From positions 1 to 64,000 of the IMG/VR virus record IMGVR_UViG_3300028864_000016: DNA of 64,000 bases; one strand, 5' to 3'. Positions within the stretch are counted from its first letter, which is position 1, and each line of letters opens with the position of its first letter. The notes beneath the pieces were generated by a model. It saw only the letters and a list, made by a program, of their open reading frames with translations, was not told the DNA's origin and did no database searches. Positions 7,431 to 60,933 of this stretch are shown piece after piece. The translations under genes and the position numbers were made by a program.

Positions 7431-7592
7431 TGTAAAAACTCCTTTTCACCTTAACCGCCTTTCGGTCGGTGGTTTTTATATTCTGTTAATTTGTTTATGT
7501 ATTTCTTAATATTATAATATCATACCTATATATCAATTGCAAGAATTATTTTAATAAATTAATATAATAAAACATTACTTAAAATTCTTATT

Positions 7593-7862: not shown

Positions 7863-8129
7863 AATTGATACTCCTTTAAGTATAATTTAATTTCATTATT
7901 TAATATATCAGTAGTCTTTATAATTCTAATGTCTGTATTAAACCTATCTAAAGTGATCCACTGGTCAAATATACAGTACTGATTATCTTTAACAAATATA
8001 TTTGCGACTTTTCTTATATCATTGTAATAATTTATATTATTATTTCTAAAAACTTATTCCTAAACCTTGCTTAATCTTATTTCTTCTCTACGTTCTTTGA
8101 GTAGATGTTTAAAATCACCATTTCAATCA

Positions 8130-8474
8130 CTTTTAATGAGTTTGATTCATCAACATAAATATTTTCATAGAAATCAACCTCAGCTTTTAAATTATCTTGT
8201 AAAGGTACTATAAATCTAAATTTACTTATTAAACTATTAGGTTGTCTATTTTTATATAAATCTTCATATGTATCTTTTGATATTTCAACTTCATACTCTT
8301 CTCTAATCTTATCACCTTTACTTTAACAGTTAAATAATATTGCCAACTATTAATTTCTCATATTCTTACTTCTGGTGTGTAAGATAAATAACTTTGTTTT
8401 ATTAATTTACTTGGATACAATATCCACATGTTTTCAACGTTTCCATTGAATAAAAACTTTCTTTCTATTTCCAT
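8130..8474 (-). pseudogene. Frameshifted CYTH-domain (triphosphate tunnel metalloenzyme) gene remnant
   Basis: Fragments MEIEKK, YLSYTPEVRI, YYLTVK, KGDKIREEYEVEIS, SKFRFIVPL, AEVDFYE lie in shifting frames with stops; left end approximate. Confidence 0.7.
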
Positions 8475-8608
8475 ATTATATACTCTCCCTTATTTTTATT
8501 TAAATAATCCATTTTTAATTTTGTTTTTTATATTACAAAACATCTCCTTATATTATTTATTTTATTTACAAAGGGTATACTACTATTAAATAATATACCC
8601 TTATATTT

Positions 8609-9076
8609 CTACCTGTTTGCAAATTCTGCTGGAATTAATGCTTTAAAATTAATGTATGTTCCAAAAAATACATGCATAGCACTTTTAATTTCTGATAAAC
8701 TTGGTTTTGATATATTATAAATATTTTCAATTGTATCAGCATCTGAATTATTTACATCTTCAAGAGTGTTAAAACCAGCTCTTTTTAATGTATTAAATGT
8801 TCTTTGGCTAATATATCCATCACTTAATAAATATTCCACGTTGTGAACATCTGACAATGTATATAATTTTGTTGATTTTCTAAAAGTCTTAGCAACTCCA
8901 CCGTTTTCTTTCCAGTGGCTTTTAAAACTTGAGAAATCACTTGCTAAGCGTACTGTTATAGATTTTTCAGTTTCTTTTTCAATTTTTATAACTTCAAATA
9001 AAAATCCATCTGTTTCTGGAATTTCCATTCCTACCTTTAATTCACTTGCATTTATTGTTATTATCATTATAATCAT
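8609..9076 (-). CDS. Protein with C-terminal RNA polymerase alpha-CTD-like domain
   Basis: ISQRTFNTLKRAGFNTLEDV...IYNISKPSLSEIK resembles RpoA CTD LSVR.YNCLKRAGINT...NLG.KSLEE. Confidence 0.8.
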   Translation of the reverse strand: MIIMIITINASELKVGMEIPETDGFLFEVIKIEKETEKSITVRLASDFSSFKSHWKENGGVAKTFRKSTKLYTLSDVHNVEYLLSDGYISQRTFNTLKRAGFNTLEDVNNSDADTIENIYNISKPSLSEIKSAMHVFFGTYINFKALIPAEFANR

Positions 9077-9142
9077 TCTCCTTTTTCTGCTTTAACTCCG
9101 TGTAGGTGAGTAGCTATTACTTATTAATTTATTTATATATTA

Positions 9143-10515: not shown

Positions 10516-10677
10516 AATATCTACTCCCTTATGTACCTTAACTCCCTTATAAAGGTGAGTGGCTAATGTTTTAATTTGTTTCTATAATTACATTATACTC
10601 TCATTCTATGGTAAGTCAAGTATTATTTTAATAAATTAATATAATTATTTTCGATTAAAATACTAACTTTATAGTAA

Positions 10678-11589
10678 TTATTTAGCTTGAATTACTTCAT
10701 CATTCTGCGTAGTCACTGTTAAACTATCATCTACTTTATAACTGTCATTATCTGCATAGAATGAATATAAATTATTATCTATTTTAATTACAACTAAATT
10801 ATTTTGTTCTGGATAAGTAGCAACTACACTTGCTTTATATTCACCGTTTAACGCCTCATGTACGTCTTTAGATTCTAAGTCAAGTATTATTCTATCTCCT
10901 TTATTCCATTGCTCATGGTCTTCTATAGCACGTTCAAAATTATATACTTTATTATTATATTCTGCTTGGATAAAATACTTATCAGAATTAATTACAGTTG
11001 CATTTACGTCTTGTGCCATTACTGGATTAGATGTAGTTAATAATACTATAGTTGCTATTACAAATGATTTTACAAATGTCTTAACTTGTTTAACAGTATT
11101 ATTAGGTTTAGTTGTTTTTGTGGTAGCTTGGTTTAATTCTTCTAATTTGAATGATAACCAGTCAAAGTCTTCTCTGTTTTCTACTTCTTGTGATAATTCT
11201 GTAAAGATTCTATCTGCTTCAATTTCTTCTTGAGTTCCCTCTATTGCGTTTCTAAAGTTTGCTTTTGCTTCTTGATATTTAATGTATAGTTGTTCATTTG
11301 ATAAGGTTTTAATTGATTCTTCATTTGATTTATTATATTTTTTTAATAAATTTTCCACGAATTCTTTATTTGCTGGAGTATTTTCATTTATTTCTTCATT
11401 ATTAATCATATCATGAACATCTAATTTCATTTCACTTGCTTTTTTATCATCATATCCCATAATATTTTTCCATCTATCTATTTCTCTTTCAAAATTTAAT
11501 AATATATCTAATTTACTTATTGGATATTCGTTCCATGCATAAGATTTAACTTTAAAATATTTATTTATTGTTGTTTTCATTTTAATCAT
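10678..11589 (-). CDS. Hypothetical protein with internal hydrophobic/signal-like segment and beta-rich C-terminal domain
   Basis: KSFVIATIVLLTTSNPVMAQ segment mid-protein. Confidence 0.7.
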   Translation of the reverse strand: MIKMKTTINKYFKVKSYAWNEYPISKLDILLNFEREIDRWKNIMGYDDKKASEMKLDVHDMINNEEINENTPANKEFVENLLKKYNKSNEESIKTLSNEQLYIKYQEAKANFRNAIEGTQEEIEADRIFTELSQEVENREDFDWLSFKLEELNQATTKTTKPNNTVKQVKTFVKSFVIATIVLLTTSNPVMAQDVNATVINSDKYFIQAEYNNKVYNFERAIEDHEQWNKGDRIILDLESKDVHEALNGEYKASVVATYPEQNNLVVIKIDNNLYSFYADNDSYKVDDSLTVTTQNDEVIQAK

Positions 11590-11825
11590 ACTCCTTAATT
11601 TAATTATTAAATATTTTTTATTTGCTTTAATTTATTTAACTTGTCTGTTTTATATGTAAGTTACAACTTTTAACTATTTAAATTTTATACTTGAACTATC
11701 CTGCCACGCATTCTAGCTTGGAGACTTAAAAGGTTTTATTAAGTTGTAACCTTGTCTACATTTATAATTATAAAGGATTGTTTTGTATTTGTCAATAAAT
11801 TAATAGAAATACTTTGAATTGTTTT

Positions 11826-13544
11826 TCACACTGCAACTTGTTCTGATTTCTCTATTTCTGATAAATAATAATTTAATATTATTTTAGCATCTTTTAAAGT
11901 CGAACAACTACCCTTTTTAAAACTATTTCCATTTGCATCAACTGCAATAAAAGTTCCCCAAATATTTAATATATAATAATCTTGTGCATTTACTATAGTT
12001 ATATAAGCAGTTTTTTCAACCAAGTTACTACCTTGAAAATAATTATTTCCATTTGAAATTGATACATTAACTTGTTTTTTAATTCTCTTATATTCATATT
12101 CTTTTTTATTTGATAATACTGCATCAATAAACTTTTTATCTTTTTCTTTTATTATTTTACCTTTTATATCCCCTAGTTTGCTTTTATATTCACTCTCTAG
12201 TGCTATTAGCTCTCTCATTAAGTTATCGTGTCTAGAATTCATTTTAGCGTCTTTACGTGCATTTCTTCCGTCTCTACCTGTTGTCATCCAGCTTGGGTTG
12301 TCTGCATTATTTCTAAGTAGTTTATAATAATTTTCATAGTAACGTTTCTTATAACTATTTAACCATGATTTATATTTATTCTTAATTGAATTATCTTCTA
12401 ACTTATCTAATTCGATAATAAATTTATTTTGATAATTATTTAAATAATTTAATATTTCTTGTTGGTGGTCACGTTCTTTAGTTCTCATAACCCAATGACC
12501 ATCATTTTCTCTTTTGCTTATTTCTTTAGATATTAGAAAATTTTCAGCGTTTATATTATCAATGTTAATTTCTATTGGTTCAACTTCTTTTAACTCTGTT
12601 GTATTGATTGTATTATTTTCTTGTTGCCCTTCATTATTTAATAAACCTATTGATTGCAAAAATTGTTTCGCTTGCTCTGAGTCTTTAGTATACCAACATT
12701 TATTAAATTTTGCCCACCTGTAACCATTTGCTTTTAACTGATTTCTAATTTCTTCACTTGGTTTGTCATTGAAATATAATTCTATTCCGTTCTTTTCTGT
12801 ATTAAATTTAACTTCACAACCAATTTCATTGTTTATAGTTTGTTCTGTTGATTCTATTGTTATTTCTTGAATTGATTCAACTGCTGAAGTTTCTTTTGTT
12901 TCTGGTTCTGCAACAATTTCTATAACTTCAACTGGTTTAGATTCTTTTATTATATCACCTTTTTTAGTTTCTATTTTATTAAGAACTTCACAAACTTTTA
13001 TTATTTCTTGAGTTAATCCTATTGTGCAACTATATTCATTACCTGAAGAAATAGTTTGACCTTTTTTTCCTAATTCCTTGATATATATTGTTTTATTTTC
13101 TCTAAATTTAACTAACCATATAGTTCTATTTCCTATGTATTTTTCTCCAAAAGTTCCAAATTTAATTCCATTAGGAAATTTAATAATTGAACCATCTTTT
13201 ACTTCTTGATTTTCTGATTTTACAAATTCAATTACTACTTCTTCTGAGTTAATTCCATTTAAATACTCATTAACTTCCTTTTTAGCTTTCTTCAAATCAG
13301 TCACTATTTCTATATTCATATTTGGGTCATTTTTGATTGATTTTTCATTGTAAAAATAATATCTATATCCACCACTTTTTTCAGTTCCATCAAGTTTAAC
13401 TTTAATTAAGCAATATTCATTTTTTACTATTGAATATCTAGCATCTTTCTTTGTGTAATCGTGAGCTACAACATATATATCATTTTCGCCTTTAACTATA
13501 GTTCCTGTTAATTTAACAAATTGACCTTCTTGTAATTGTAACAT
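11826..13544 (-). CDS. Multidomain protein with polyvalent-protein-associated (LPD-like) domain
   Basis: NTEKNGIELYF.DKPSEEIR..LKANGYRW....KCWY motif common in phage/conjugative-element early proteins. Confidence 0.7.
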   Translation of the reverse strand: MLQLQEGQFVKLTGTIVKGENDIYVVAHDYTKKDARYSIVKNEYCLIKVKLDGTEKSGGYRYYFYNEKSIKNDPNMNIEIVTDLKKAKKEVNEYLNGINSEEVVIEFVKSENQEVKDGSIIKFPNGIKFGTFGEKYIGNRTIWLVKFRENKTIYIKELGKKGQTISSGNEYSCTIGLTQEIIKVCEVLNKIETKKGDIIKESKPVEVIEIVAEPETKETSAVESIQEITIESTEQTINNEIGCEVKFNTEKNGIELYFNDKPSEEIRNQLKANGYRWAKFNKCWYTKDSEQAKQFLQSIGLLNNEGQQENNTINTTELKEVEPIEINIDNINAENFLISKEISKRENDGHWVMRTKERDHQQEILNYLNNYQNKFIIELDKLEDNSIKNKYKSWLNSYKKRYYENYYKLLRNNADNPSWMTTGRDGRNARKDAKMNSRHDNLMRELIALESEYKSKLGDIKGKIIKEKDKKFIDAVLSNKKEYEYKRIKKQVNVSISNGNNYFQGSNLVEKTAYITIVNAQDYYILNIWGTFIAVDANGNSFKKGSCSTLKDAKIILNYYLSEIEKSEQVAV

Positions 13545-26902: not shown

Positions 26903-27988
26903 TTATCTTTTGAAATCATTCATTGCTCTACTAAATAAATTATCTATATCATCATCATCTATAATATCTTCAAATTTAGTCTCTTCTATAGTTTCAGATT
27001 TTTCATTAGTTTTAGTGTTGTTAGTATGTTTGGATTTAAAAGAAAAACCACGATTTTTATTTTTTCCTTTTTTTAATTCTCTTTCTGTTAATTCTGATTC
27101 AATGTCTTCTATATCGTCATTTGGAGTTTCACAACCACCAAGACAAATTAAGTTACTTTTTCCATAAGTTTTAAACATTGTTTTATCAGCATTTATTAAT
27201 TCAAGTATATCTGCTATATTGTATTTTTCTGTAACATTTATAGCTCCATACTCACAGTCTAAATCATTTGGCAGTGCAAATACACTTTTTTCTTGAGCTT
27301 CACTTATTGCATCCTCTAATGAACTATAATTAGTTGGTAATTGCAATACAATTCCATATCCTTTAGACGTAGTAACATTAGTTAAATTATCCTCATCTAT
27401 ACTACCAATTGCATCATGTCCTAACATACTATAGGATTTATTTATTAATTTAATTGATTCAGTATTAATTTCTTCATATGTGTCACGTTTGTTATTATTA
27501 ATAAATTTTATATCATTAATTAAATTAGATATTTCTGATAATTCTTCACAACATTCTAAAGCATTTTTTAATTGTAAGTTGTCTTCCTTAAGACTTGGCA
27601 AAACTCCAACAACATTAATTATCATATTAGGAAATATCTTTTTAATAGTTCTTATAAATTCAGGTACAGTACCTGATCCAGTCCCTCCACCCATTGCCGT
27701 GAATATTAAAATATATTTAAACTGAGCATATTTTTTTAAAAAAGAAGCTAATCTAACTTGGTCATTTAATATAAATTTATTTGCTCTTTCTCTATTTCTT
27801 CCTGACCCGTCTGCTCCACCATAAATAAAAACATTACTATCAATATCAGCAAAACGAAGTCCTTTTATATCTCCTAAACTTGAATTAATATAAATACTTG
27901 TATATCTTTCATTTACTGTTCTCATTAAATCTGCTAATACATTACCACATTGCCCTAAACCAGCTATTAATAGATTATCACGTTTCAT
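26903..27988 (-). CDS. tubZ: Tubulin/FtsZ-family partition GTPase TubZ
   Basis: GLGQCGN, GADGSGRNR, tubulin signature GGGTGSG, T7-like IDEDN, basic/acidic tail; terminator 26858-26891. Confidence 0.88.
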   Translation of the reverse strand: MKRDNLLIAGLGQCGNVLADLMRTVNERYTSIYINSSLGDIKGLRFADIDSNVFIYGGADGSGRNRERANKFILNDQVRLASFLKKYAQFKYILIFTAMGGGTGSGTVPEFIRTIKKIFPNMIINVVGVLPSLKEDNLQLKNALECCEELSEISNLINDIKFINNNKRDTYEEINTESIKLINKSYSMLGHDAIGSIDEDNLTNVTTSKGYGIVLQLPTNYSSLEDAISEAQEKSVFALPNDLDCEYGAINVTEKYNIADILELINADKTMFKTYGKSNLICLGGCETPNDDIEDIESELTERELKKGKNKNRGFSFKSKHTNNTKTNEKSETIEETKFEDIIDDDDIDNLFSRAMNDFKR

Positions 27989-31655: not shown

Positions 31656-33062
31656 ATGAAAGAAAAAACAGAAATAGTAAAAAAGGAATTATCATTAGAA
31701 TACCTACCACATAGAGGTAAGTTAATTAACTGGAAAGAATTAGTAGGTAAATTTGTACATTTTGTATATGGAGACATTGAGGGATTTATTGAGATTGTAG
31801 AATATTATATAGAAGAAAATAAAATTAAAACAAGATATAAAGACATAGAATATATAACAACAACTAGTAATTTTCAAAAAATAAAAATCTCGAATTGTTT
31901 AGGGATAAAAAGAAAAAACAGTAAAAAAGTAGGGTTTGAATATAATGTAGGGGATATTATAACCACCAATAATGGTAAAATTAAAATAATAAAACAAATT
32001 AGAGTTGGAGAAAAAAATATAAGAAGTTATGAGTATAAGTGCTTAATAGATGGAGATATAGATACCATAAGAGAATATGATTTAATTAAAGGTTGTGGTT
32101 GTAAAGTTTGTTCAAATCATAAAGTAGTGAAAGGTATAAATGACATTGCAACTACTCACCCATATTTAGTGAAGTATTTCAAAAACATAGAAGATACTTA
32201 TACTCATTCATACGGAAGTAAAGATAATTTTATATTCAAATGTCCAGACTGTGGTTGCGAAAAAGAAATGATAATAGTATTTTTTATTAAGCAAAATTAT
32301 TGTTGTCCTAAATGCAGTGATGGAATTTCTGTGGCACAAAAGATAATGTTTAATATTTTTGAACAGTTAAACGTAGATTTTATAACTGAATATAATCCTG
32401 ATTGGATTAAACCTAGAAGGTATGATTTTTACTTTAAAATACAAGATAAAAAATACATACTTGAAACAGATGGTGGTTGGCATATAAAAGATAATAATAG
32501 AAGTGGACAAACCAAGGAAAAATCTAAGTCAATAGATGATTATAAGGATGAGCAAGCTGTTTTAAATGGTATTGAAAAACCAATTAGAATAGATTGTAAT
32601 TATGGAAGTAAGGATAGATTTGAATATATCAGACAAAATATATTAAATAGTAAAAAACTAAATAAATTATTTGATTTAAGTAAAATTGATTGGAATAAAT
32701 GTTTTGATTTTTCATTATCATCAAGAATAAAAGAAGCTTGTGAATATAAGAAAAATAATCCTAATATGGCTACTGGTGATATAAGTAAAATAATGAAATT
32801 ATCACAAAGTAGTATAACAAATTTTCTCAAAGTGGGAAATGAAATGGGTTTATGTTATTATGACACTAAAGAAGAAATTAAAAAAAGTGGAAAGATAAAT
32901 AGTAAAAAAGTTATTTGTTTAGATGATGGATTGATTTTTGATTCAGCTAGAGAAGCAGGACGATTTTATAAATGTCATGGAAACAAAGTTTCAGCAGTAT
33001 GTCGTGGAGAAAGACAGTCTACTGGAGAGCGACATTTTTCATATAATAACATAACCAAATAA
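31656..33062 (+). CDS. Free-standing putative homing endonuclease (zinc ribbons, DUF559/PD-(D/E)xK-like nuclease, NUMOD1-like tail)
   Basis: CKVC, CPDC, CPKC; RYDFYF...ILETDGGWH...DDYKD; FDSAREA...VCRG. Confidence 0.75.
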   Translation: MKEKTEIVKKELSLEYLPHRGKLINWKELVGKFVHFVYGDIEGFIEIVEYYIEENKIKTRYKDIEYITTTSNFQKIKISNCLGIKRKNSKKVGFEYNVGDIITTNNGKIKIIKQIRVGEKNIRSYEYKCLIDGDIDTIREYDLIKGCGCKVCSNHKVVKGINDIATTHPYLVKYFKNIEDTYTHSYGSKDNFIFKCPDCGCEKEMIIVFFIKQNYCCPKCSDGISVAQKIMFNIFEQLNVDFITEYNPDWIKPRRYDFYFKIQDKKYILETDGGWHIKDNNRSGQTKEKSKSIDDYKDEQAVLNGIEKPIRIDCNYGSKDRFEYIRQNILNSKKLNKLFDLSKIDWNKCFDFSLSSRIKEACEYKKNNPNMATGDISKIMKLSQSSITNFLKVGNEMGLCYYDTKEEIKKSGKINSKKVICLDDGLIFDSAREAGRFYKCHGNKVSAVCRGERQSTGERHFSYNNITK

Positions 33063-33369
33063 CACCTTATATCAGATTCATTTACTTAAACATCAAAATA
33101 ACCCTCAATTTCAAGACTTGTCCCATCAAAGGTATTAGTTGTTGTCTAAAAATAGAACGCCTTAGAGAGCCAAATGAATGCGTTTAATCCCTATATATAA
33201 ATATATGCGAGATGTAGTAGAAATATTACATCTTTTTTATGTTTTTAATTATCTTTTAATAAAAGTAGTTTTGTGTAAGAAAAATCATAGATTAATAAAT
33301 TAATAGAAATAAGTATTGAATTAATTATAATAATATGGTAGTATAGGAATTAGGAAAGGAGGGTAAATA

Positions 33370-35685: not shown

Positions 35686-35724
35686 TACATATTAATAAAT
35701 TAATAGAAATAAGGAGGAAATATA

Positions 35725-36198: not shown

Positions 36199-36559
36199 AA
36201 AGTATTTACTCAGATTAAAACATTTAGTCTATTTCAGGTTCTAGCATACGTAGTCGAATAAGTTGTTAAGTCAATATTTTTATATTAAATTCAGATAAAG
36301 TTTTGATTTAATTATATATGTTATTAAATTAAAAATATTTGGGTTTTAATTTTAAAAATTAGTTAGTAATATACTTTGTTGACTAAGTAATAAAAACGTC
36401 TTAGAATTAAAATCTTTTGGTTTCAGTAAATAAAAACTGATAAAGAATAGTGTATTGTATAATGATTAATAAATTAATATAAATAAAGTTTAAATCAAAT
36501 GCGTGTTTTTTTGGGAATTTAAAATAAATAAAGAATGAAAAATAAAGGAGAAATGTAAA

Positions 36560-37265: not shown

Positions 37266-40046
37266 ATGTCTAAGCAATTGTATAGTCAAAGATTTATATT
37301 AAAAATCCATTCATCAAGATTAAAGTTAAGCAAATGGAGCTTGGATATAAATTTAAAAGAAGCTAGAGACAATGAAGAATTAATATCATTAGGGGATGGT
37401 CAGTTATTAAGATTCATAAGAGAAATACGAAATATTAACAACACAGAAAAACAAATTAAAGAAATCAAAAAGGAAATTAAAGATGTAAAAAATGATAAGA
37501 ATAGTAAAAAAAATAAAGAAAAAATAATGGAATTATATAATGAATTGGATAAAATGTTATATATCAAAGATTATATAGCAATTGTATTTGATAAAAAATC
37601 AGATTTTGATAGAGCAACTGGAAAGAAAGGTGTATTTATAAATGGGAAGAGATATAAAAGATTAATTGGTACTACTGGAGGTGTAAAAGGAAATACAGTA
37701 ATGTTTTGTACTGAGGAAATACATAAAGAATTAAATGATAGATTAGAAAATGGAAGAAAAAAAGACGTTCCAATAATACCAGCAAAGTTTGAAGCTTATA
37801 AATCATTATCTGCAAGTGTATCTACTCCAGTAACTCAAACAGATAGAATATTAGTTATTAAAGATGGAACTACTCACATAAAAGATAAAGTTATTAGAGT
37901 GTATGATAATGATAAAGGTGGATTTAAAGTAGACCATAATGTTGAATATGAAGCTGACAAAGACTTTACAGATGGCGGAGGAATGGTAAGACCTTCAATT
38001 ATGGAACAATGGGCTATTGACTTGGGATTAACTAAAGGAGACGATAATGGGGATATAGTTGCTGATTATATCCCAAGTGGAGTAAACTCAAGATGGTCAT
38101 ATGAAAAAGGAATGCTAGTGACTTATGATTTTGAAATGTTTGCAAAAGAAATAGCTGGTACATATGAAGTTATAGATGCTTGGGGAAATAAACATGACAT
38201 TAGAAACATTGATATTATATTAACTACTAATATGCTAAAACTATGGAACGCTTATGATGATATAGACGATTACTTGAACAATTGTAAAAAGAATAATTTT
38301 TTACTAAGTGTTACAAAAGTTACTCCTAAAGAATTAGAAATAAAAAGAAATATGAATTATCAATACTTACAAAGTTATAACTTATCAGATGAAGATATTA
38401 CTGAATTAACATCCGAAACAGTAAATAATATAAAAGATGTTATAAGTGGTGATTATATAAAATCAATTCTATTTTCAAAAGGAATACATATAACAAAAGG
38501 CAATATTCTGAAATCAGATTATGATTATATAAGAGCTTTAACAATAGATAAAAGAGTGTTACAAGATTCATATGTTAAAAGTAAAATATATAAAATGATT
38601 GAAAAAACAATAAAGGAAGCTAAGAAAGGTGTAATTCAAACTAATGGTTCGTACTCAATAATTATAGGCGATATGTATGCACTCTGTCAGTCAATGTTTG
38701 GATTACCAATTACGGGTTTATTGAAAAAAGGAGAATTCTATAGTAGGACTTGGTCAGATAGGGGGAAAAAAGAAATAGTAGGATTCCGTTCACCTATGAC
38801 TTCTCACAATAATGTTAGAAAACATAAATTAGTTGATAATGAAGAATTAAGAAAATGGTTTAAATACATAAGAACTATGACAGTGTTTAATGCTTGGGAT
38901 ACTACAACAGATGCTATGAACGGGGCAGATTTTGATTCAGATGCAGAAATAGAAATAGATGATGATGTCATTACTAGAAATACTAGAAATGAATTAGCTA
39001 TTATTTGTGAACAAAAGTCAGCAAGTAAAGTAAAAGTTACTGAAAGCTTATTAAAAAAATCAAATAAAAATGGTTTTGGTGATGATATTGGAACTATTAC
39101 TAATAGAGTTACTGCAATGTTCGATGTATTAGCTTCATTAAAAGAAGGAACATTAGAATATAAAGAATTAATGGATAGAATAATATGTGGACAAGCATAT
39201 CAACAAGAAAGTATAGATAAAATAAAAGGAATTCAAGCTAAGCAAATGCCTAAACATTGGTATGATTATAAATGTAATAAGGTTAAACTTGAAGATAGTA
39301 AAGAAATAAGCGAAGAAAAAAATAAGAATATTAAATTAATGGTAAACAAAAAGCCTTATTTCTTTATTTATAACTATGACAATTTATTTAATAAATATAG
39401 AACATTTATTAAAAATGTTAAAAATAACTCATTAATTAAATTTGGATTGACTTTAGATGAATTAAAAAATAAGGAAAATAAAACTGAAGATGAGATAAAG
39501 TTTTTAAATTCAATACAATATAAAAGTCCAGTATTTTCAAATCCATGTACTATGAATAAAATATGTTGGAAAATTGAAGATGAATTCAAAGATATTAAAC
39601 TAAAAGTTAATAACTCTGATGGGTTTGACAAAGAGATATTAAAGACTAAGGTAAAATATGATAAAAATACATACTTAGAAATTGAAAATCTATATAGAGA
39701 ATATTTAAGACAACAAAAGCAATTTGGGCAAACTGCAAGATATAAATTAACAAAGGAAGAAAAAGATAGTCAAAGACAAATATTTGTTGAAAATTTTAAA
39801 ACTAAAGCCATTGAGATGTGCTCAAATAGTGAAATATTATGTAATATTGTCATTGATATAACTTATAAGGGCAAGAACCACAGGCAATTTGCATGGGATA
39901 TTTGTGGGGAACAAATCATTGAAAACTTATTAAATAAGAATGACAGGAAATATAAATATCCATTACAAGATAAAAACGGAGATATTGAATGGCAAGGGTT
40001 AAAATTTAAAGTAATAGAATTGGAGGACAAAGTATGCGAGGAGTAA
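37266..40046 (+). CDS. YonO-like single-subunit (RdRP-fold) DNA-dependent RNA polymerase
   Basis: FTDGGG, KGML, FRSP, catalytic-loop NGADFDSD, IGTITN, QESIDK.K; upstream of HU and head genes as in SPbeta. Confidence 0.85.
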   Translation: MSKQLYSQRFILKIHSSRLKLSKWSLDINLKEARDNEELISLGDGQLLRFIREIRNINNTEKQIKEIKKEIKDVKNDKNSKKNKEKIMELYNELDKMLYIKDYIAIVFDKKSDFDRATGKKGVFINGKRYKRLIGTTGGVKGNTVMFCTEEIHKELNDRLENGRKKDVPIIPAKFEAYKSLSASVSTPVTQTDRILVIKDGTTHIKDKVIRVYDNDKGGFKVDHNVEYEADKDFTDGGGMVRPSIMEQWAIDLGLTKGDDNGDIVADYIPSGVNSRWSYEKGMLVTYDFEMFAKEIAGTYEVIDAWGNKHDIRNIDIILTTNMLKLWNAYDDIDDYLNNCKKNNFLLSVTKVTPKELEIKRNMNYQYLQSYNLSDEDITELTSETVNNIKDVISGDYIKSILFSKGIHITKGNILKSDYDYIRALTIDKRVLQDSYVKSKIYKMIEKTIKEAKKGVIQTNGSYSIIIGDMYALCQSMFGLPITGLLKKGEFYSRTWSDRGKKEIVGFRSPMTSHNNVRKHKLVDNEELRKWFKYIRTMTVFNAWDTTTDAMNGADFDSDAEIEIDDDVITRNTRNELAIICEQKSASKVKVTESLLKKSNKNGFGDDIGTITNRVTAMFDVLASLKEGTLEYKELMDRIICGQAYQQESIDKIKGIQAKQMPKHWYDYKCNKVKLEDSKEISEEKNKNIKLMVNKKPYFFIYNYDNLFNKYRTFIKNVKNNSLIKFGLTLDELKNKENKTEDEIKFLNSIQYKSPVFSNPCTMNKICWKIEDEFKDIKLKVNNSDGFDKEILKTKVKYDKNTYLEIENLYREYLRQQKQFGQTARYKLTKEEKDSQRQIFVENFKTKAIEMCSNSEILCNIVIDITYKGKNHRQFAWDICGEQIIENLLNKNDRKYKYPLQDKNGDIEWQGLKFKVIELEDKVCEE

Positions 40047-45519: not shown

Positions 45520-45890
45520 ACATTGCAGACACTCATGTGAGGTTTGACAATTTATTAATTTTATAACGAATATTAAACGTGTAACGAGAATTGCATAGAA
45601 GTAGAAAATGGTTCTCTACAGACTCGAAAGAGTATCTCAGATGATGGATACACCGACCATCCTATGCAATTTAATAAAACAACTATTTTAGAAGGTATTT
45701 AAGTGAGGGCTAACACTCATTCCCCAGAGTAATTTTTATTTACTCGTCACTCCTTGAGGGGACGTTAAAATAATATTCAAGGCAAGGTTAGAATAGGGCG
45801 TGAAAACCTAACAAAGTGTTGAATTGAGTTATGATGACTTTAACAAAAAAGTAGGCGATTTGATAATGTGAAGTTATCCATCGCCTATAT
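45520..45890 (+). ncRNA. Cluster of stem-loops, putative ncRNA(s)
   Basis: AATTGCATAG/CTATGCAATT (45589-45671) enclosing three hairpins; further stems to 45888; ORF-free. Confidence 0.45.
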
Positions 45891-60401: not shown

Positions 60402-60933
60402 TAATAAATTAAAATAATAAAAGAAAGAAGGAATATTAATATGTATAGAAGATTACAAGTAAACGCAGGTAAAGTATTTAATGCTCAAAACACAGTAAAG
60501 GTTGATATGAAAAGGGGGACTTTTGTAAACGAGAGTTACGATTCCGCTAACAAAATTACTACATTAATAAAAGCAGTTGCAGATGCAAATGTTTTAGGAA
60601 TTTTAACAAGAGATGTAGTTGTTGATGTTGATGTAGCAATGGGTGTTCCAGTTTCAAATTATGCTACAACTCAAGACCTTATCAAAGCTGGTGAATTTGC
60701 TGGTGTTGAAACAATTCAAAAAGGGGAAAGATATGCTACAGAAATTTTTGCTTCTGCTTTAGTTGATGCCGATGTAGTTGAAGGTTCTCTATTAACTGTA
60801 GTAAATGGAGAATTAGCAAAAGGAACAACTGGTTCTGCTTTTTATAGCCTTGGTTGGGTTTATGACGCAGGACACAAATTATTAGGATTCAGATTAGTTT
60901 AATAAATTAAAATAATAAAAGAAAGAAGGAATA
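60402..60933 (+). repeat. Identical 34 bp direct repeat at 60402-60435 and 60900-60933
   Basis: TAATAAATTAAAATAATAAAAGAAAGAAGGAATA before decoration and capsid genes. Confidence 0.9.
60441..60902 (+). CDS. Putative capsid decoration/cement protein
   Basis: 153 aa G/A/V-rich, between scaffold and capsid genes. Confidence 0.6.
   Translation: MYRRLQVNAGKVFNAQNTVKVDMKRGTFVNESYDSANKITTLIKAVADANVLGILTRDVVVDVDVAMGVPVSNYATTQDLIKAGEFAGVETIQKGERYATEIFASALVDADVVEGSLLTVVNGELAKGTTGSAFYSLGWVYDAGHKLLGFRLV

What the first reader, a model, noticed from the sequence alone, without database searches (positions are those of the whole stretch)
8609..9076. Phage-encoded RNA polymerase alpha-CTD mimic
The C-terminal ~60 aa follow the RpoA CTD pattern, including the residues equivalent to DNA-contacting R265/N268 (QRTFN) and a variant of the GKKS loop (SKPS), fused to an unrelated N-terminal domain. 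Inference: it could titrate host activators or Spx, or occupy UP elements, to redirect early transcription in a phage that also encodes its own RNAP.
Basis: partly seen in the sequence, partly recalled or inferred. Interest (0 to 1): 0.6.

Follow-up and report, generated by a model that had tools for sequence, protein, structure and literature searches.

The report
Phage protein carrying RNA polymerase alpha-CTD domain
A large phage from peat encodes a small protein whose back half is a true copy of the DNA- and regulator-docking end domain of the bacterial RNA polymerase alpha subunit, joined to an unrelated small barrel domain. It is probably a free-floating competitor or adaptor in transcription control, but no function has been tested.

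Summary
Window 8609-9076 (minus strand) is a 155-aa ORF. The likely start is the ATG at 9067, giving 152 aa. Residues about 80-140 are homologous to the bacterial RNA polymerase alpha C-terminal domain (alpha-CTD), Bacillota type, by sequence and by predicted fold. QRTFN carries the equivalents of E. coli R265 and N268. SKPS replaces GKKS.

The N-terminal 75 residues are a separate small beta-barrel. It belongs to an orphan family of phage and mobile-element proteins, and its fold resembles EF-P domain I without detectable sequence similarity.

The 218-kb genome is related to Clostridium phage c-st. It does encode its own RNA polymerase, a single-subunit YonO-like enzyme.

The protein has no alpha N-terminal domain, so it is not a polymerase subunit. 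Helix 1, which in B. subtilis docks Spx and ComA and carries the DNA-reading arginine, is invariant in the phage family. The second hairpin has lost the glycine and two basic residues that all 18 sampled Bacillota RpoA proteins keep. This fits a decoy for alpha-CTD partners better than canonical UP-element binding. Both readings remain inference, because the Spx complex prediction gave no verdict.

Alpha-CTD domains outside RpoA are common in databases, so this is a new variant of a known kind. Interest is moderate.

The parts
8609..9076 (-). ORF of the two-domain protein (155 aa from the ATG at 9076; stop codon 8609-8611). The probable true start is the ATG at 9067, giving 152 aa.
   Evidence: database record P0002 of 152 aa; the Atlas record starts at residue 4
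9077..9082 (-). Shine-Dalgarno-like AGGAGA. It directly abuts the first ATG and lies 9 nt upstream of the ATG at 9067.
   Evidence: read from the sequence
8852..9067 (-). N-terminal small beta-barrel domain (residues 4-75). It belongs to an orphan phage and mobile-element family with conserved DGFLF, ITVRL.SDFS and GG(V/I)xKTFRKSTK motifs.
   Evidence: six strands in the AF2 model, pLDDT 83-96; fold like EF-P domain I, Z 8.9, rmsd 1.4 over 59 residues; 69 family representatives; alignments A2 and A5
8657..8839 (-). Alpha-CTD-homologous (HhH)2 domain, residues about 80-140.
8792..8806 (-). QRTFN (residues 91-95) in helix 1. R92 is E. coli R265 / B. subtilis R261. F94 is B. subtilis Y263. N95 is E. 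coli N268 / B. subtilis N264. It is followed by T-L-K98-R99-A-G, matching B. subtilis K267 and R268.
   Evidence: residue roles taken from PMC8501982
8699..8710 (-). SKPS (residues 123-126), the degenerate second hairpin that replaces G296-K297-K298-S299 of E. coli.
8612..8656 (-). C-terminal aromatic tail (residues 141-155). It is present in the four proteins most similar to this one (P0003-P0005, P0088) and truncated in the shorter subfamily; confidence in the model is lower here.
8567..8605 (-). Stable hairpin starting 4 nt after the stop codon (-16.3 kcal/mol, z -3.7). It may be a terminator or RNA-stability element, but no U-tract follows it.

Best explanation
Shown: the gene encodes a small two-domain accessory protein of a c-st-like jumbo phage. 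The C-terminal domain is a true, diverged homologue (33-41% identity) of the Bacillota RNA polymerase alpha-CTD. The N-terminal domain is a small SH3/KOW-like barrel from an orphan family that elsewhere stands alone in temperate Clostridia phages or is fused to ArdC-like proteins of conjugative elements. The protein lacks the alpha N-terminal domain, so it cannot enter RNA polymerase as a subunit. Inferred: it acts as a free alpha-CTD that competes with the polymerase's own alpha-CTDs for their partners. The most likely partners are proteins that dock on helix 1 (Spx-type and ComA-type regulators, or a phage factor), because that face is invariant. Canonical UP-element DNA is less likely, because the second DNA-contacting hairpin is degenerate. 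The effect would be to dampen regulator-dependent host transcription while the phage's YonO-like polymerase, which has no alpha subunit, is unaffected. The barrel domain would supply a second contact, either to nucleic acid through its conserved basic hairpin or to another protein. Its partner is unknown.
For: The alpha-CTD homology is specific by sequence and by fold. Helix 1, Q-R-T-[FY]-N-T-[LF]-K-[RK]-[AD]-G, is near-invariant across the 13 phage family members. It matches Bacillota RpoA R-S-[YF]-N-C-L-K-R-A-G. In B. subtilis R261, Y263, N264, K267 and R268 are the Spx contacts, and C265 and K267 serve ComA (PMC8501982; PMC2801614). The aromatic residue at the Y263 position is a low-GC Gram-positive feature and is kept as F or Y. 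There is no alpha-NTD: the full-length RpoA models reach only 27-33 bits against cut-offs of 228-277. Second hairpin: all 18 Bacillota RpoA proteins that aligned have V-R-N-L-G-[KR]-K-S, while the phage family has I-Y-N-[IM]-S-K-x-S. The phage has its own YonO-like polymerase. The gene lies in a minus-strand block of small orphan genes together with an Ant-like anti-repressor and a primase-like gene, opposite the block that holds the polymerase and the structural genes. It is identical in contigs from two further peat samples, and both domains are conserved across homologues down to 53% identity.
Against: No binding data exist. The Spx plus CTD complex prediction gave no verdict. Some Spx-contact positions are not conserved (V260 to Q; L256 and E254 vary). 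The conserved helix 1 also contains the core of the first HhH motif and the DNA-reading Arg and Asn, so its invariance may reflect fold or DNA binding and not protein docking. Alpha-CTD domains are used widely outside RpoA, apparently as generic modules. The host, and whether it has Spx, is unknown. The closest named relative, c-st, gave no match to this protein at E 0.01 or better, so it is not essential to the YonO-type life style. Expression timing is not known, and the metatranscriptome contigs did not cover the gene.
Confidence: 0.4

Rival explanations
1. It is a generic DNA-binding accessory protein. The alpha-CTD-type (HhH)2 domain serves only as a minor-groove, AT-rich DNA binder on a genome that is 75% A+T. 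The barrel domain is the real effector, for example in DNA entry, anti-restriction, replication or plasmid-prophage maintenance. No mimicry of RNA polymerase is involved.
For: R92, N95, N121, K124 and S126, which are equivalents of the E. coli DNA-binding determinant, are invariant or nearly so. PF03118 domains occur in many unrelated architectures: fused to ribosomal protein L4 or sigma region 4, and as short proteins. They also occur as tandem repeats in large proteins, in 8 of 61 Bacillota genomes sampled. An alpha-CTD-like domain sits in the nucleic-acid-binding part of PglW (PMC12839542). The barrel domain is fused to ArdC-N/metalloprotease proteins next to SSB and conjugation genes. A recurrent AT-rich intergenic motif is present, including just upstream of this gene.
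Against: The second hairpin has lost the Gly and two basic residues that every sampled RpoA keeps. From established E. coli mutagenesis of G296 and K298 (my knowledge, Gaal et al. and Murakami et al. 1996), this should weaken the canonical DNA contact. The CTD is net acidic. The Firmicute-specific surface aromatic residue is kept although it has no DNA role.
Confidence: 0.3
2. It is an adaptor that lends an alpha-CTD to a polymerase in trans. The barrel domain would dock on host RNA polymerase or on the phage's YonO-like polymerase, and the CTD would then read upstream AT-rich DNA or recruit activators, boosting phage promoters.
For: The architecture of a small barrel followed by a DNA-binding helical domain is reminiscent of RNA-polymerase-binding Tudor/KOW barrels. 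The UvrD/PcrA Tudor domains that bind the beta lobe appear among the fold matches, at Z 5.5 and 5.1. YonO-like enzymes have no alpha subunit (PMC7824862). Phage intergenic regions carry a recurrent AT-rich motif.
Against: Five phage records that carry the barrel domain alone, four of them complete, have no YonO-like polymerase. The c-st record gave no match to this protein at E 0.01 or better. The Tudor matches are much weaker than the EF-P match and lie within the generic range. There is no evidence that the barrel binds a polymerase.
Confidence: 0.12
3. It bridges translation and transcription. The EF-P-domain-I-like barrel would contact the ribosome or tRNA, and the alpha-CTD would contact NusA or RNA polymerase.
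For: The best fold match of the N-domain is EF-P/EfpL/eIF5A domain I (Z 8.9-7.4, rmsd 1.4-2.4). Fusions of ribosomal protein L4 with alpha-CTD exist in Chloroflexota.
Against: There is no sequence relationship to EF-P (hhalign probability below 1%; aIF5A E 1.1). The fold is a very common small barrel, and many orphan 60-80-aa phage proteins share it.
Confidence: 0.05
4. It is a decaying captured fragment of host rpoA with no function.
For: The gene immediately downstream, a CYTH-like gene, is broken, so decay does occur in this region.
Against: The frame is intact with a good ribosome-binding site. Both domains are conserved in about 13 homologues down to 53% identity, with invariant motifs. 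The sequence is identical in two further peat samples.
Confidence: 0.03

Closest known systems
Alpha-CTD of bacterial RNA polymerase subunit alpha (RpoA), Bacillota type (B. subtilis 1Z3E/3GFK chain B; Pfam PF03118)
   Same: The same (HhH)2 fold (Z 9.6, rmsd 2.2 over 67 residues). It is 33-41% identical to RpoA CTDs of Bacillota. Helix 1 keeps R, [FY], N, L, K, R, A and G, and the N..K.SL..IK of the second hairpin and helix is also retained.
   Different: It is not joined to the alpha N-terminal dimerisation and assembly domains. V260 is Q and C265 is T. R-N-L-G-K-K-S has become Y-N-I-S-K-x-S. It has an extra aromatic C-terminal tail. It is encoded by a phage.
Non-RpoA proteins with a PF03118 domain: short stand-alone proteins partly from viruses, L4 and sigma-r4 fusions, and tandem-repeat proteins of Bacillota
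   Same: An alpha-CTD domain used outside the polymerase subunit. Some Atlas clusters of 82-188 aa have half of their taxon-assigned members viral. Extra copies occur in 8 of 61 Bacillota genomes.
   Different: None of those seen carries this N-terminal barrel. The fusion was found in only about 13 metagenomic proteins. I found no functional study of any of them in the paper library.
Phage factors that disable alpha-CTD function: T4 Alt/ModA (ADP-ribosylation of R265), S. aureus phage G1 gp67 (blocks UP-dependent promoters), Pseudomonas phage Rac (alpha cleavage)
   Same: If the decoy reading is right, it attacks the same regulatory node, the alpha-CTD-dependent promoters. Knowledge of T4 and gp67 is from memory. 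Rac is cited in PMC7824862.
   Different: Those proteins are enzymes or sigma binders with no similarity to alpha-CTD. Here the phage carries a copy of the domain itself.
EF-P / EfpL / eIF5A domain I (KOW-like SH3 barrel)
   Same: The fold of the N-terminal domain (Z 8.9, rmsd 1.4 over 59 residues).
   Different: There is no detectable sequence similarity. EF-P domains II and III are absent. It has a family-specific basic hairpin, GGVxKTFRKSTK.
YonO of B. subtilis prophage SPbeta and the c-st homologue (context only)
   Same: The phage's 926-aa polymerase is 50% identical to the c-st protein and 25% identical to the SPbeta-group YonO region, and carries GADFDSD.
   Different: This is a different gene from the finding. 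No link between it and the alpha-CTD protein was found.

Membership tests
RNA_pol_A_CTD domain family (Pfam PF03118) | Significant sequence match to the family model | tested here: met
   Precomputed PF03118 hits on P0002-P0005, P0007-P0014 and P0016. Local matches to seven RpoA models, best E 2.3e-8. PDB RpoA chains at E 1.3e-5. A profile of the family CTDs (with one E. coli RpoA row) retrieves 1768 proteins at E 0.001 or better; all 120 listed carry PF03118.
RNA_pol_A_CTD domain family (Pfam PF03118) | Compact helical fold with two helix-hairpin-helix motifs | tested here: met
   AF2 model with pLDDT about 90 and helices at 80-85, 91-99, 105-109, 113-117 and 124-138. 1z3e_B Z 9.6, 2max Z 8.2, 4mex_A Z 7.6, 1doq Z 7.3, all above RAD51-N and SAM domains.
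RNA_pol_A_CTD domain family (Pfam PF03118) | DNA-binding '265 determinant' (E. coli R265, N268, C269, G296, K298, S299) | tested here: inconclusive
   R, N and S are invariant. C269 is T, G296 is S, and K298 is P/L/V/I/S. DNA binding itself cannot be tested with these tools.
RNA polymerase subunit alpha (RpoA, TIGR02027 / NF0035xx equivalogs) | Full-length score above the curated cut-off, with the N-terminal dimerisation and beta/beta' assembly domains present | tested here: not met
   27-33 bits against cut-offs of 228-523, and only model positions about 230-308 match. The N-terminal half is an unrelated barrel.
Spx/activator-binding alpha-CTD of low-GC Gram-positives | Helix-1 contact residues (B. 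subtilis V260, R261, Y263, N264, K267, R268; PMC8501982) | tested here: inconclusive
   R, N, K and R are identical, Y is F or Y, and V is Q. The complex prediction with SPX_BACSU gave no verdict.
EF-P / eIF5A N-terminal domain (PF08207 / PF21485) | Sequence membership in the family | tested here: not met
   hhalign probability 0.4-0.7% against E. coli EF-P domain I. A profile search of the PDB finds aIF5A only at E 1.1. No Pfam hit is recorded for N-domain-only relatives.
EF-P / eIF5A N-terminal domain (PF08207 / PF21485) | KOW-like SH3 barrel fold | tested here: met
   5wxk_B Z 8.9 with rmsd 1.4 over 59 residues; 8s8u_B Z 8.0. Atlas rows with EFP_N have TM 0.71-0.73 normalised by the target.
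YonO-like single-subunit RNA polymerase (context claim 'phage encodes its own RNAP') | Two-barrel RdRP-family enzyme with a DxDxD metal motif | tested here: met
   Window 37266-40046: Atlas clusters with PF05183 at score 0.98 and structure TM 0.93. GADFDSD lies at residues 553-559 (D555, D557, D559). It is 50% identical to c-st over 99% of its length, and matches SPbeta-group phages.

The most novel reading that the evidence does not exclude
A phage carries a detached copy of the host polymerase's alpha-CTD as a molecular decoy. By soaking up helix-1-docking regulators, and perhaps upstream promoter DNA, it would uncouple host RNA polymerase from its activators, while the phage's alpha-less YonO-like polymerase transcribes the phage genome untouched. 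That would be a host-takeover strategy based on mimicry of a polymerase domain, which I did not find described in the paper library.
Probability: 0.25. Interest if true: 0.75.

Novelty: new variant of a known kind. Interest (0 to 1): 0.5.

Why it matters
Alpha-CTD is the hub through which many bacterial activators, Spx-type regulators and UP elements act. Phages are known to modify it or block it. They are not known to copy it. If this protein competes for alpha-CTD partners, it would be a simple, genetically encoded probe of alpha-CTD-dependent regulation in Clostridia and Bacilli, and an example of domain mimicry in host takeover. Even if it is only a DNA-binding module, the finding defines a new orphan barrel domain family (about 69 cluster representatives) shared by temperate Clostridia phages, conjugative elements and this jumbo phage. 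It also shows that auto-annotation of such proteins as 'DNA-directed RNA polymerase alpha subunit' is misleading.

Tried and rejected
- Complex prediction of B. subtilis Spx with residues 76-155 gave no verdict (score 0.00, controls not run). It is not evidence either way.
- PHROGs has no family for the protein (best E 0.06). PADLOC has none.
- DNA of the region has no match in the GenBank phage collection. tblastn of the protein there finds only six weak CTD-only matches in unannotated records, several of them short.
- The N-domain was compared with E. coli EF-P domain I, with the PDB by profile, and with the upstream 97-aa neighbour. No sequence relationship was found.
- The idea that the barrel docks on the YonO-like polymerase was weakened. 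None of five phage records that carry the barrel alone, four of them complete, has such a polymerase.
- A first search for a multisubunit beta' DFDGD motif found nothing. The polymerase turned out to be of the YonO type.
- A CTD-only word search found two proteins. A profile that included the E. coli row was swamped by truncated gammaproteobacterial RpoA fragments and said nothing about stand-alone phage CTDs.
- tblastn against extra alpha-CTD-like domains of Bacillota showed the phage CTD is no closer to them than to RpoA.
- In the laid contigs, the RNA contigs of one wetland metatranscriptome lie at 10547-10746 and 11783-11959 and not on the gene, so there is no expression evidence.
- Four literature searches found no paper on phage alpha-CTD-domain proteins. 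One further call was malformed.
- The immediate neighbours have no recognised function, and they are not syntenic with those of the homologues.

Full report
**1. What is at the coordinates**

Window 8609-9076 holds one 155-aa ORF on the minus strand. The window is the first 64 kb of a 218,173-bp IMG/VR virus record with about 25% G+C. An AGGAGA at 9082-9077 abuts the first ATG and lies 9 nt before the ATG at 9067. The database record of the same protein has 152 aa, and the Atlas record starts at residue 4. The product is therefore most likely 152 aa. A stable hairpin (8567-8605, -16.3 kcal/mol, z -3.7) follows the stop codon.

**2. The C-terminal domain is a real alpha-CTD homologue**

- The seven best NCBIfam matches are all RpoA models. 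The best is E 2.3e-8, covering protein residues 88-135 and model positions 261-308 of 320. The next families have E of 0.009 or more; the generic helix-hairpin-helix families among them (L32e, RadA, NusA C-terminal repeat) have E of 0.03 or more.
- All 15 PDB sequence matches are RpoA chains, led by the B. subtilis alpha-CTD of the Spx complex at E 1.3e-5.
- Thirteen family proteins in that search, P0002 being this window's own, carry a precomputed Pfam PF03118 hit. JGI names them 'DNA-directed RNA polymerase alpha subunit'.
- An AlphaFold2 model built on 17 sequences has mean pLDDT 89.6.
- Alpha-CTD structures are the top fold matches for residues about 76-143: 1z3e_B Z 9.6 with rmsd 2.2 over 67 residues, H. 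pylori Z 8.2, E. coli Z 7.6. These lie above RAD51-N (6.9) and SAM domains (5.8 or less).
- Against RpoA of 33 Bacillota genomes the domain is 33-41% identical over 46-56 residues in the 18 that aligned. Pairwise BLAST to E. coli RpoA is not significant.

**3. Residue mapping**

An alignment with E. coli RpoA 249-329 gives these pairs:

| Phage residue | E. coli residue | State |
|---|---|---|
| R92 | R265 | invariant |
| N95 | N268 | invariant |
| K98 | K271 | invariant |
| K124 | K297 | invariant |
| S126 | S299 | invariant |
| L127 | L300 | invariant |
| I130 | I303 | invariant |
| S123 | G296 | replaced |
| position 125 | K298 | P, L, V, I or S in the phage family |

QRTFN is nt 8792-8806 and SKPS is nt 8699-8710, both checked on the sequence.

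- Eighteen Bacillota RpoA proteins all read L-S-V-R-S-[YF]-N-C-L-K-R-A-[GAN]-[IV]-N-T ... V-R-N-L-G-[KR]-K-S-L.
- The phage family reads I-[ST]-Q-R-T-[FY]-N-T-[LF]-K-R-A-G-[FY]-N-T ... I-Y-N-[IM]-S-K-x-S-L.
- Helix 1 is therefore kept almost letter for letter. This includes the aromatic residue at B. subtilis Y263, which is typical of low-GC Gram-positives, and K267 and R268.
- The second hairpin has lost its glycine and two basic residues.
- In B. subtilis, R261, Y263, N264, K267 and R268 (with V260, L258, L256 and E254) make the Spx interface, and C265 and K267 serve ComA (PMC8501982; PMC2801614).
- The equivalents of the E. coli 287 and 261 determinants vary within the phage family.

**4. 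The N-terminal domain**

- Residues 4-75 form a six-stranded small barrel.
- Its best fold matches are EF-P, EfpL and eIF5A domain I: Z 8.9 with rmsd 1.4 over 59 residues, and Z 8.0.
- Profile comparisons find no sequence relationship to EF-P or to any solved structure.
- Many orphan 60-80-aa phage proteins share the fold.
- An exhaustive profile search finds 69 cluster representatives. Most are stand-alone proteins of 70-90 aa. Some have other extensions.
- Two relatives (530 and 620 aa) combine the domain with ArdC-N and metalloprotease regions. One of them lies beside SSB and conjugation-type genes.
- In genomes, the domain sits in prophages of Roseburia, other Lachnospiraceae and other Clostridia, and in 50-62-kb viral contigs.
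- The family keeps DGFLF, ITVRL.SDFS and a basic hairpin GG(V/I)xKTFRKSTK.
- The fusion to alpha-CTD was found in only about 13 metagenomic proteins.

**5. Genome context**

- The 926-aa protein at 37266-40046 is a YonO-like single-subunit RNA polymerase of the RdRP family. The Atlas feature score is 0.98 and the structure TM is 0.93. It carries the motif GADFDSD. It is 50% identical to Clostridium phage c-st and 25% to the SPbeta group. PMC7824862 places c-st among the jumbo phages with YonO-like enzymes.
- No multisubunit polymerase motif was found.
- Other recognised genes are a Pol III-alpha-type DNA polymerase, RecJ, DnaB, NAD ligase, NrdD, methyltransferases, tape-measure and tail proteins, many homing-endonuclease paralogues and a PhuZ/TubZ-like tubulin.
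- The alpha-CTD gene lies in the minus-strand block (1-28 kb) among small orphan genes, an Ant-like anti-repressor and a primase-like gene.
- Neighbours differ in the homologues' contigs, so the gene moves as a single unit.
- TIGR02027 finds only this one alpha-CTD in the genome.
- The stretch is present in at least 19 peat metagenome runs. The gene is identical in contigs of two further samples. Metatranscriptome contigs touch neighbouring genes but not this one.

**6. How common alpha-CTD is outside RpoA**

- ESM Atlas clusters of 82-97, 188, 257, 312, 653 and 809 aa carry PF03118. In two of them half of the taxon-assigned members are viral. Others are fused to ribosomal protein L4 or sigma region 4.
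- In 61 Bacillota genomes, 8 have extra alpha-CTD-like domains, often as 2-5 tandem copies in large proteins.
- PglW of BREX has a similar domain.
- I found no paper on phage alpha-CTD-domain proteins.

**7. Interpretation**

*Shown.* This is a two-domain phage accessory protein with a true alpha-CTD homologue and no alpha-NTD, so it is not a polymerase subunit.

*Inferred.* It most likely acts as a free alpha-CTD. Invariance of helix 1, together with decay of the second hairpin, favours competition for helix-1-docking proteins over canonical UP-element binding. The barrel would add a second, unknown contact.

*Rivals.*
- A plain AT-rich DNA binder whose functional part is the barrel.
- An adaptor that lends an alpha-CTD to a polymerase. 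This is weakened because barrel-only phages lack YonO and c-st gave no match to the protein.
- A bridge to the translation machinery, which rests on fold alone.
- A decaying fragment, which the conservation disfavours.

The Spx complex prediction returned no verdict and is not used as evidence.

**8. Verdict**

This is a new variant of a known kind, namely non-RpoA alpha-CTD-domain proteins. Interest is moderate and would rise if a helix-1-dependent partner were found.

Noticed in passing
window 37266-40046 (+): A 926-aa YonO-like single-subunit RNA polymerase of the RdRP family (PF05183), with GADFDSD at residues 553-559 (D555, D557, D559). It is 50% identical to the Clostridium phage c-st homologue and about 25% identical to SPbeta-group YonO. 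PHROGs lists its families as 'unknown function'.
   Followed up: yes
window 7900-8474 (-): A broken CYTH-like gene lies directly downstream of the alpha-CTD gene. The frame starts MEIERKFL..., meets a stop at 8358-8360, and then continues in another frame (…REEYEVEI…KAEVDFYE…). Variant contigs in other peat samples carry indels at 8321 and 8342-8353, so intact versions may exist.
   Followed up: partly
window, 22 sites, e.g. 7550-7568, 10627-10645, 33291-33309, 35691-35709, 36465-36483, 60898-60916; related copy at 9117-9138: A recurrent AT-rich intergenic motif, TTTAATAAATTAATATAAT (core AATAAATTAATA). There are 22 matches with up to 3 mismatches, against 4.2 +/- 2.2 expected. In the plus-strand block it lies 16-77 nt upstream of genes. 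It is a candidate promoter or operator, possibly for the YonO-like polymerase.
   Followed up: partly
window 45591-45669 (+): A skipping-rope RNA (Rfam RF02924) at 61.6 bits, against a gathering score of 36.7.
   Followed up: no
window 26903-27988 (-): A PhuZ/TubZ-like tubulin (phrog_17961; phrog_4733 at E 2.8e-8). Phage c-st is, from my knowledge, a plasmid prophage with TubZ, so this phage may also be maintained as a plasmid.
   Followed up: no
window 31656-33062 (+); genome 73683-75521, 129942-131456, 188371-190311, 190356-191933: At least five paralogues of phrog_4538 with embedded homing-endonuclease or HNH regions are scattered over the genome.
   Followed up: no
L091 (G066:C35), L092 (G015:C23), L094-L098: Large Bacillota proteins (open frames of 584-1182 aa) contain alpha-CTD-like domains, several with 2-5 in tandem. 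They occur in 8 of 61 genomes sampled, and their function is unknown.
   Followed up: partly
BFVD hits A0A7D0NGU0 (Escherichia phage vB_EcoM_4HA13, 177 aa), A0A7U0J5P3, A0A2U8UWV3 (Erwinia phage Faunus): Uncharacterised phage proteins of 141-177 aa align over 142-148 columns with the whole two-domain model (rmsd 12-14, so the domain orientation differs). They may have a similar architecture of barrel plus helical domain in Gram-negative phages. The sequences could not be fetched here.
   Followed up: no
window 10547-10746 and 11783-11959: Exact 200-nt and 177-nt contigs from a wetland metatranscriptome run lie on neighbouring genes of the same strand block. This may reflect transcription, or DNA carried over into the RNA library.
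   Followed up: no
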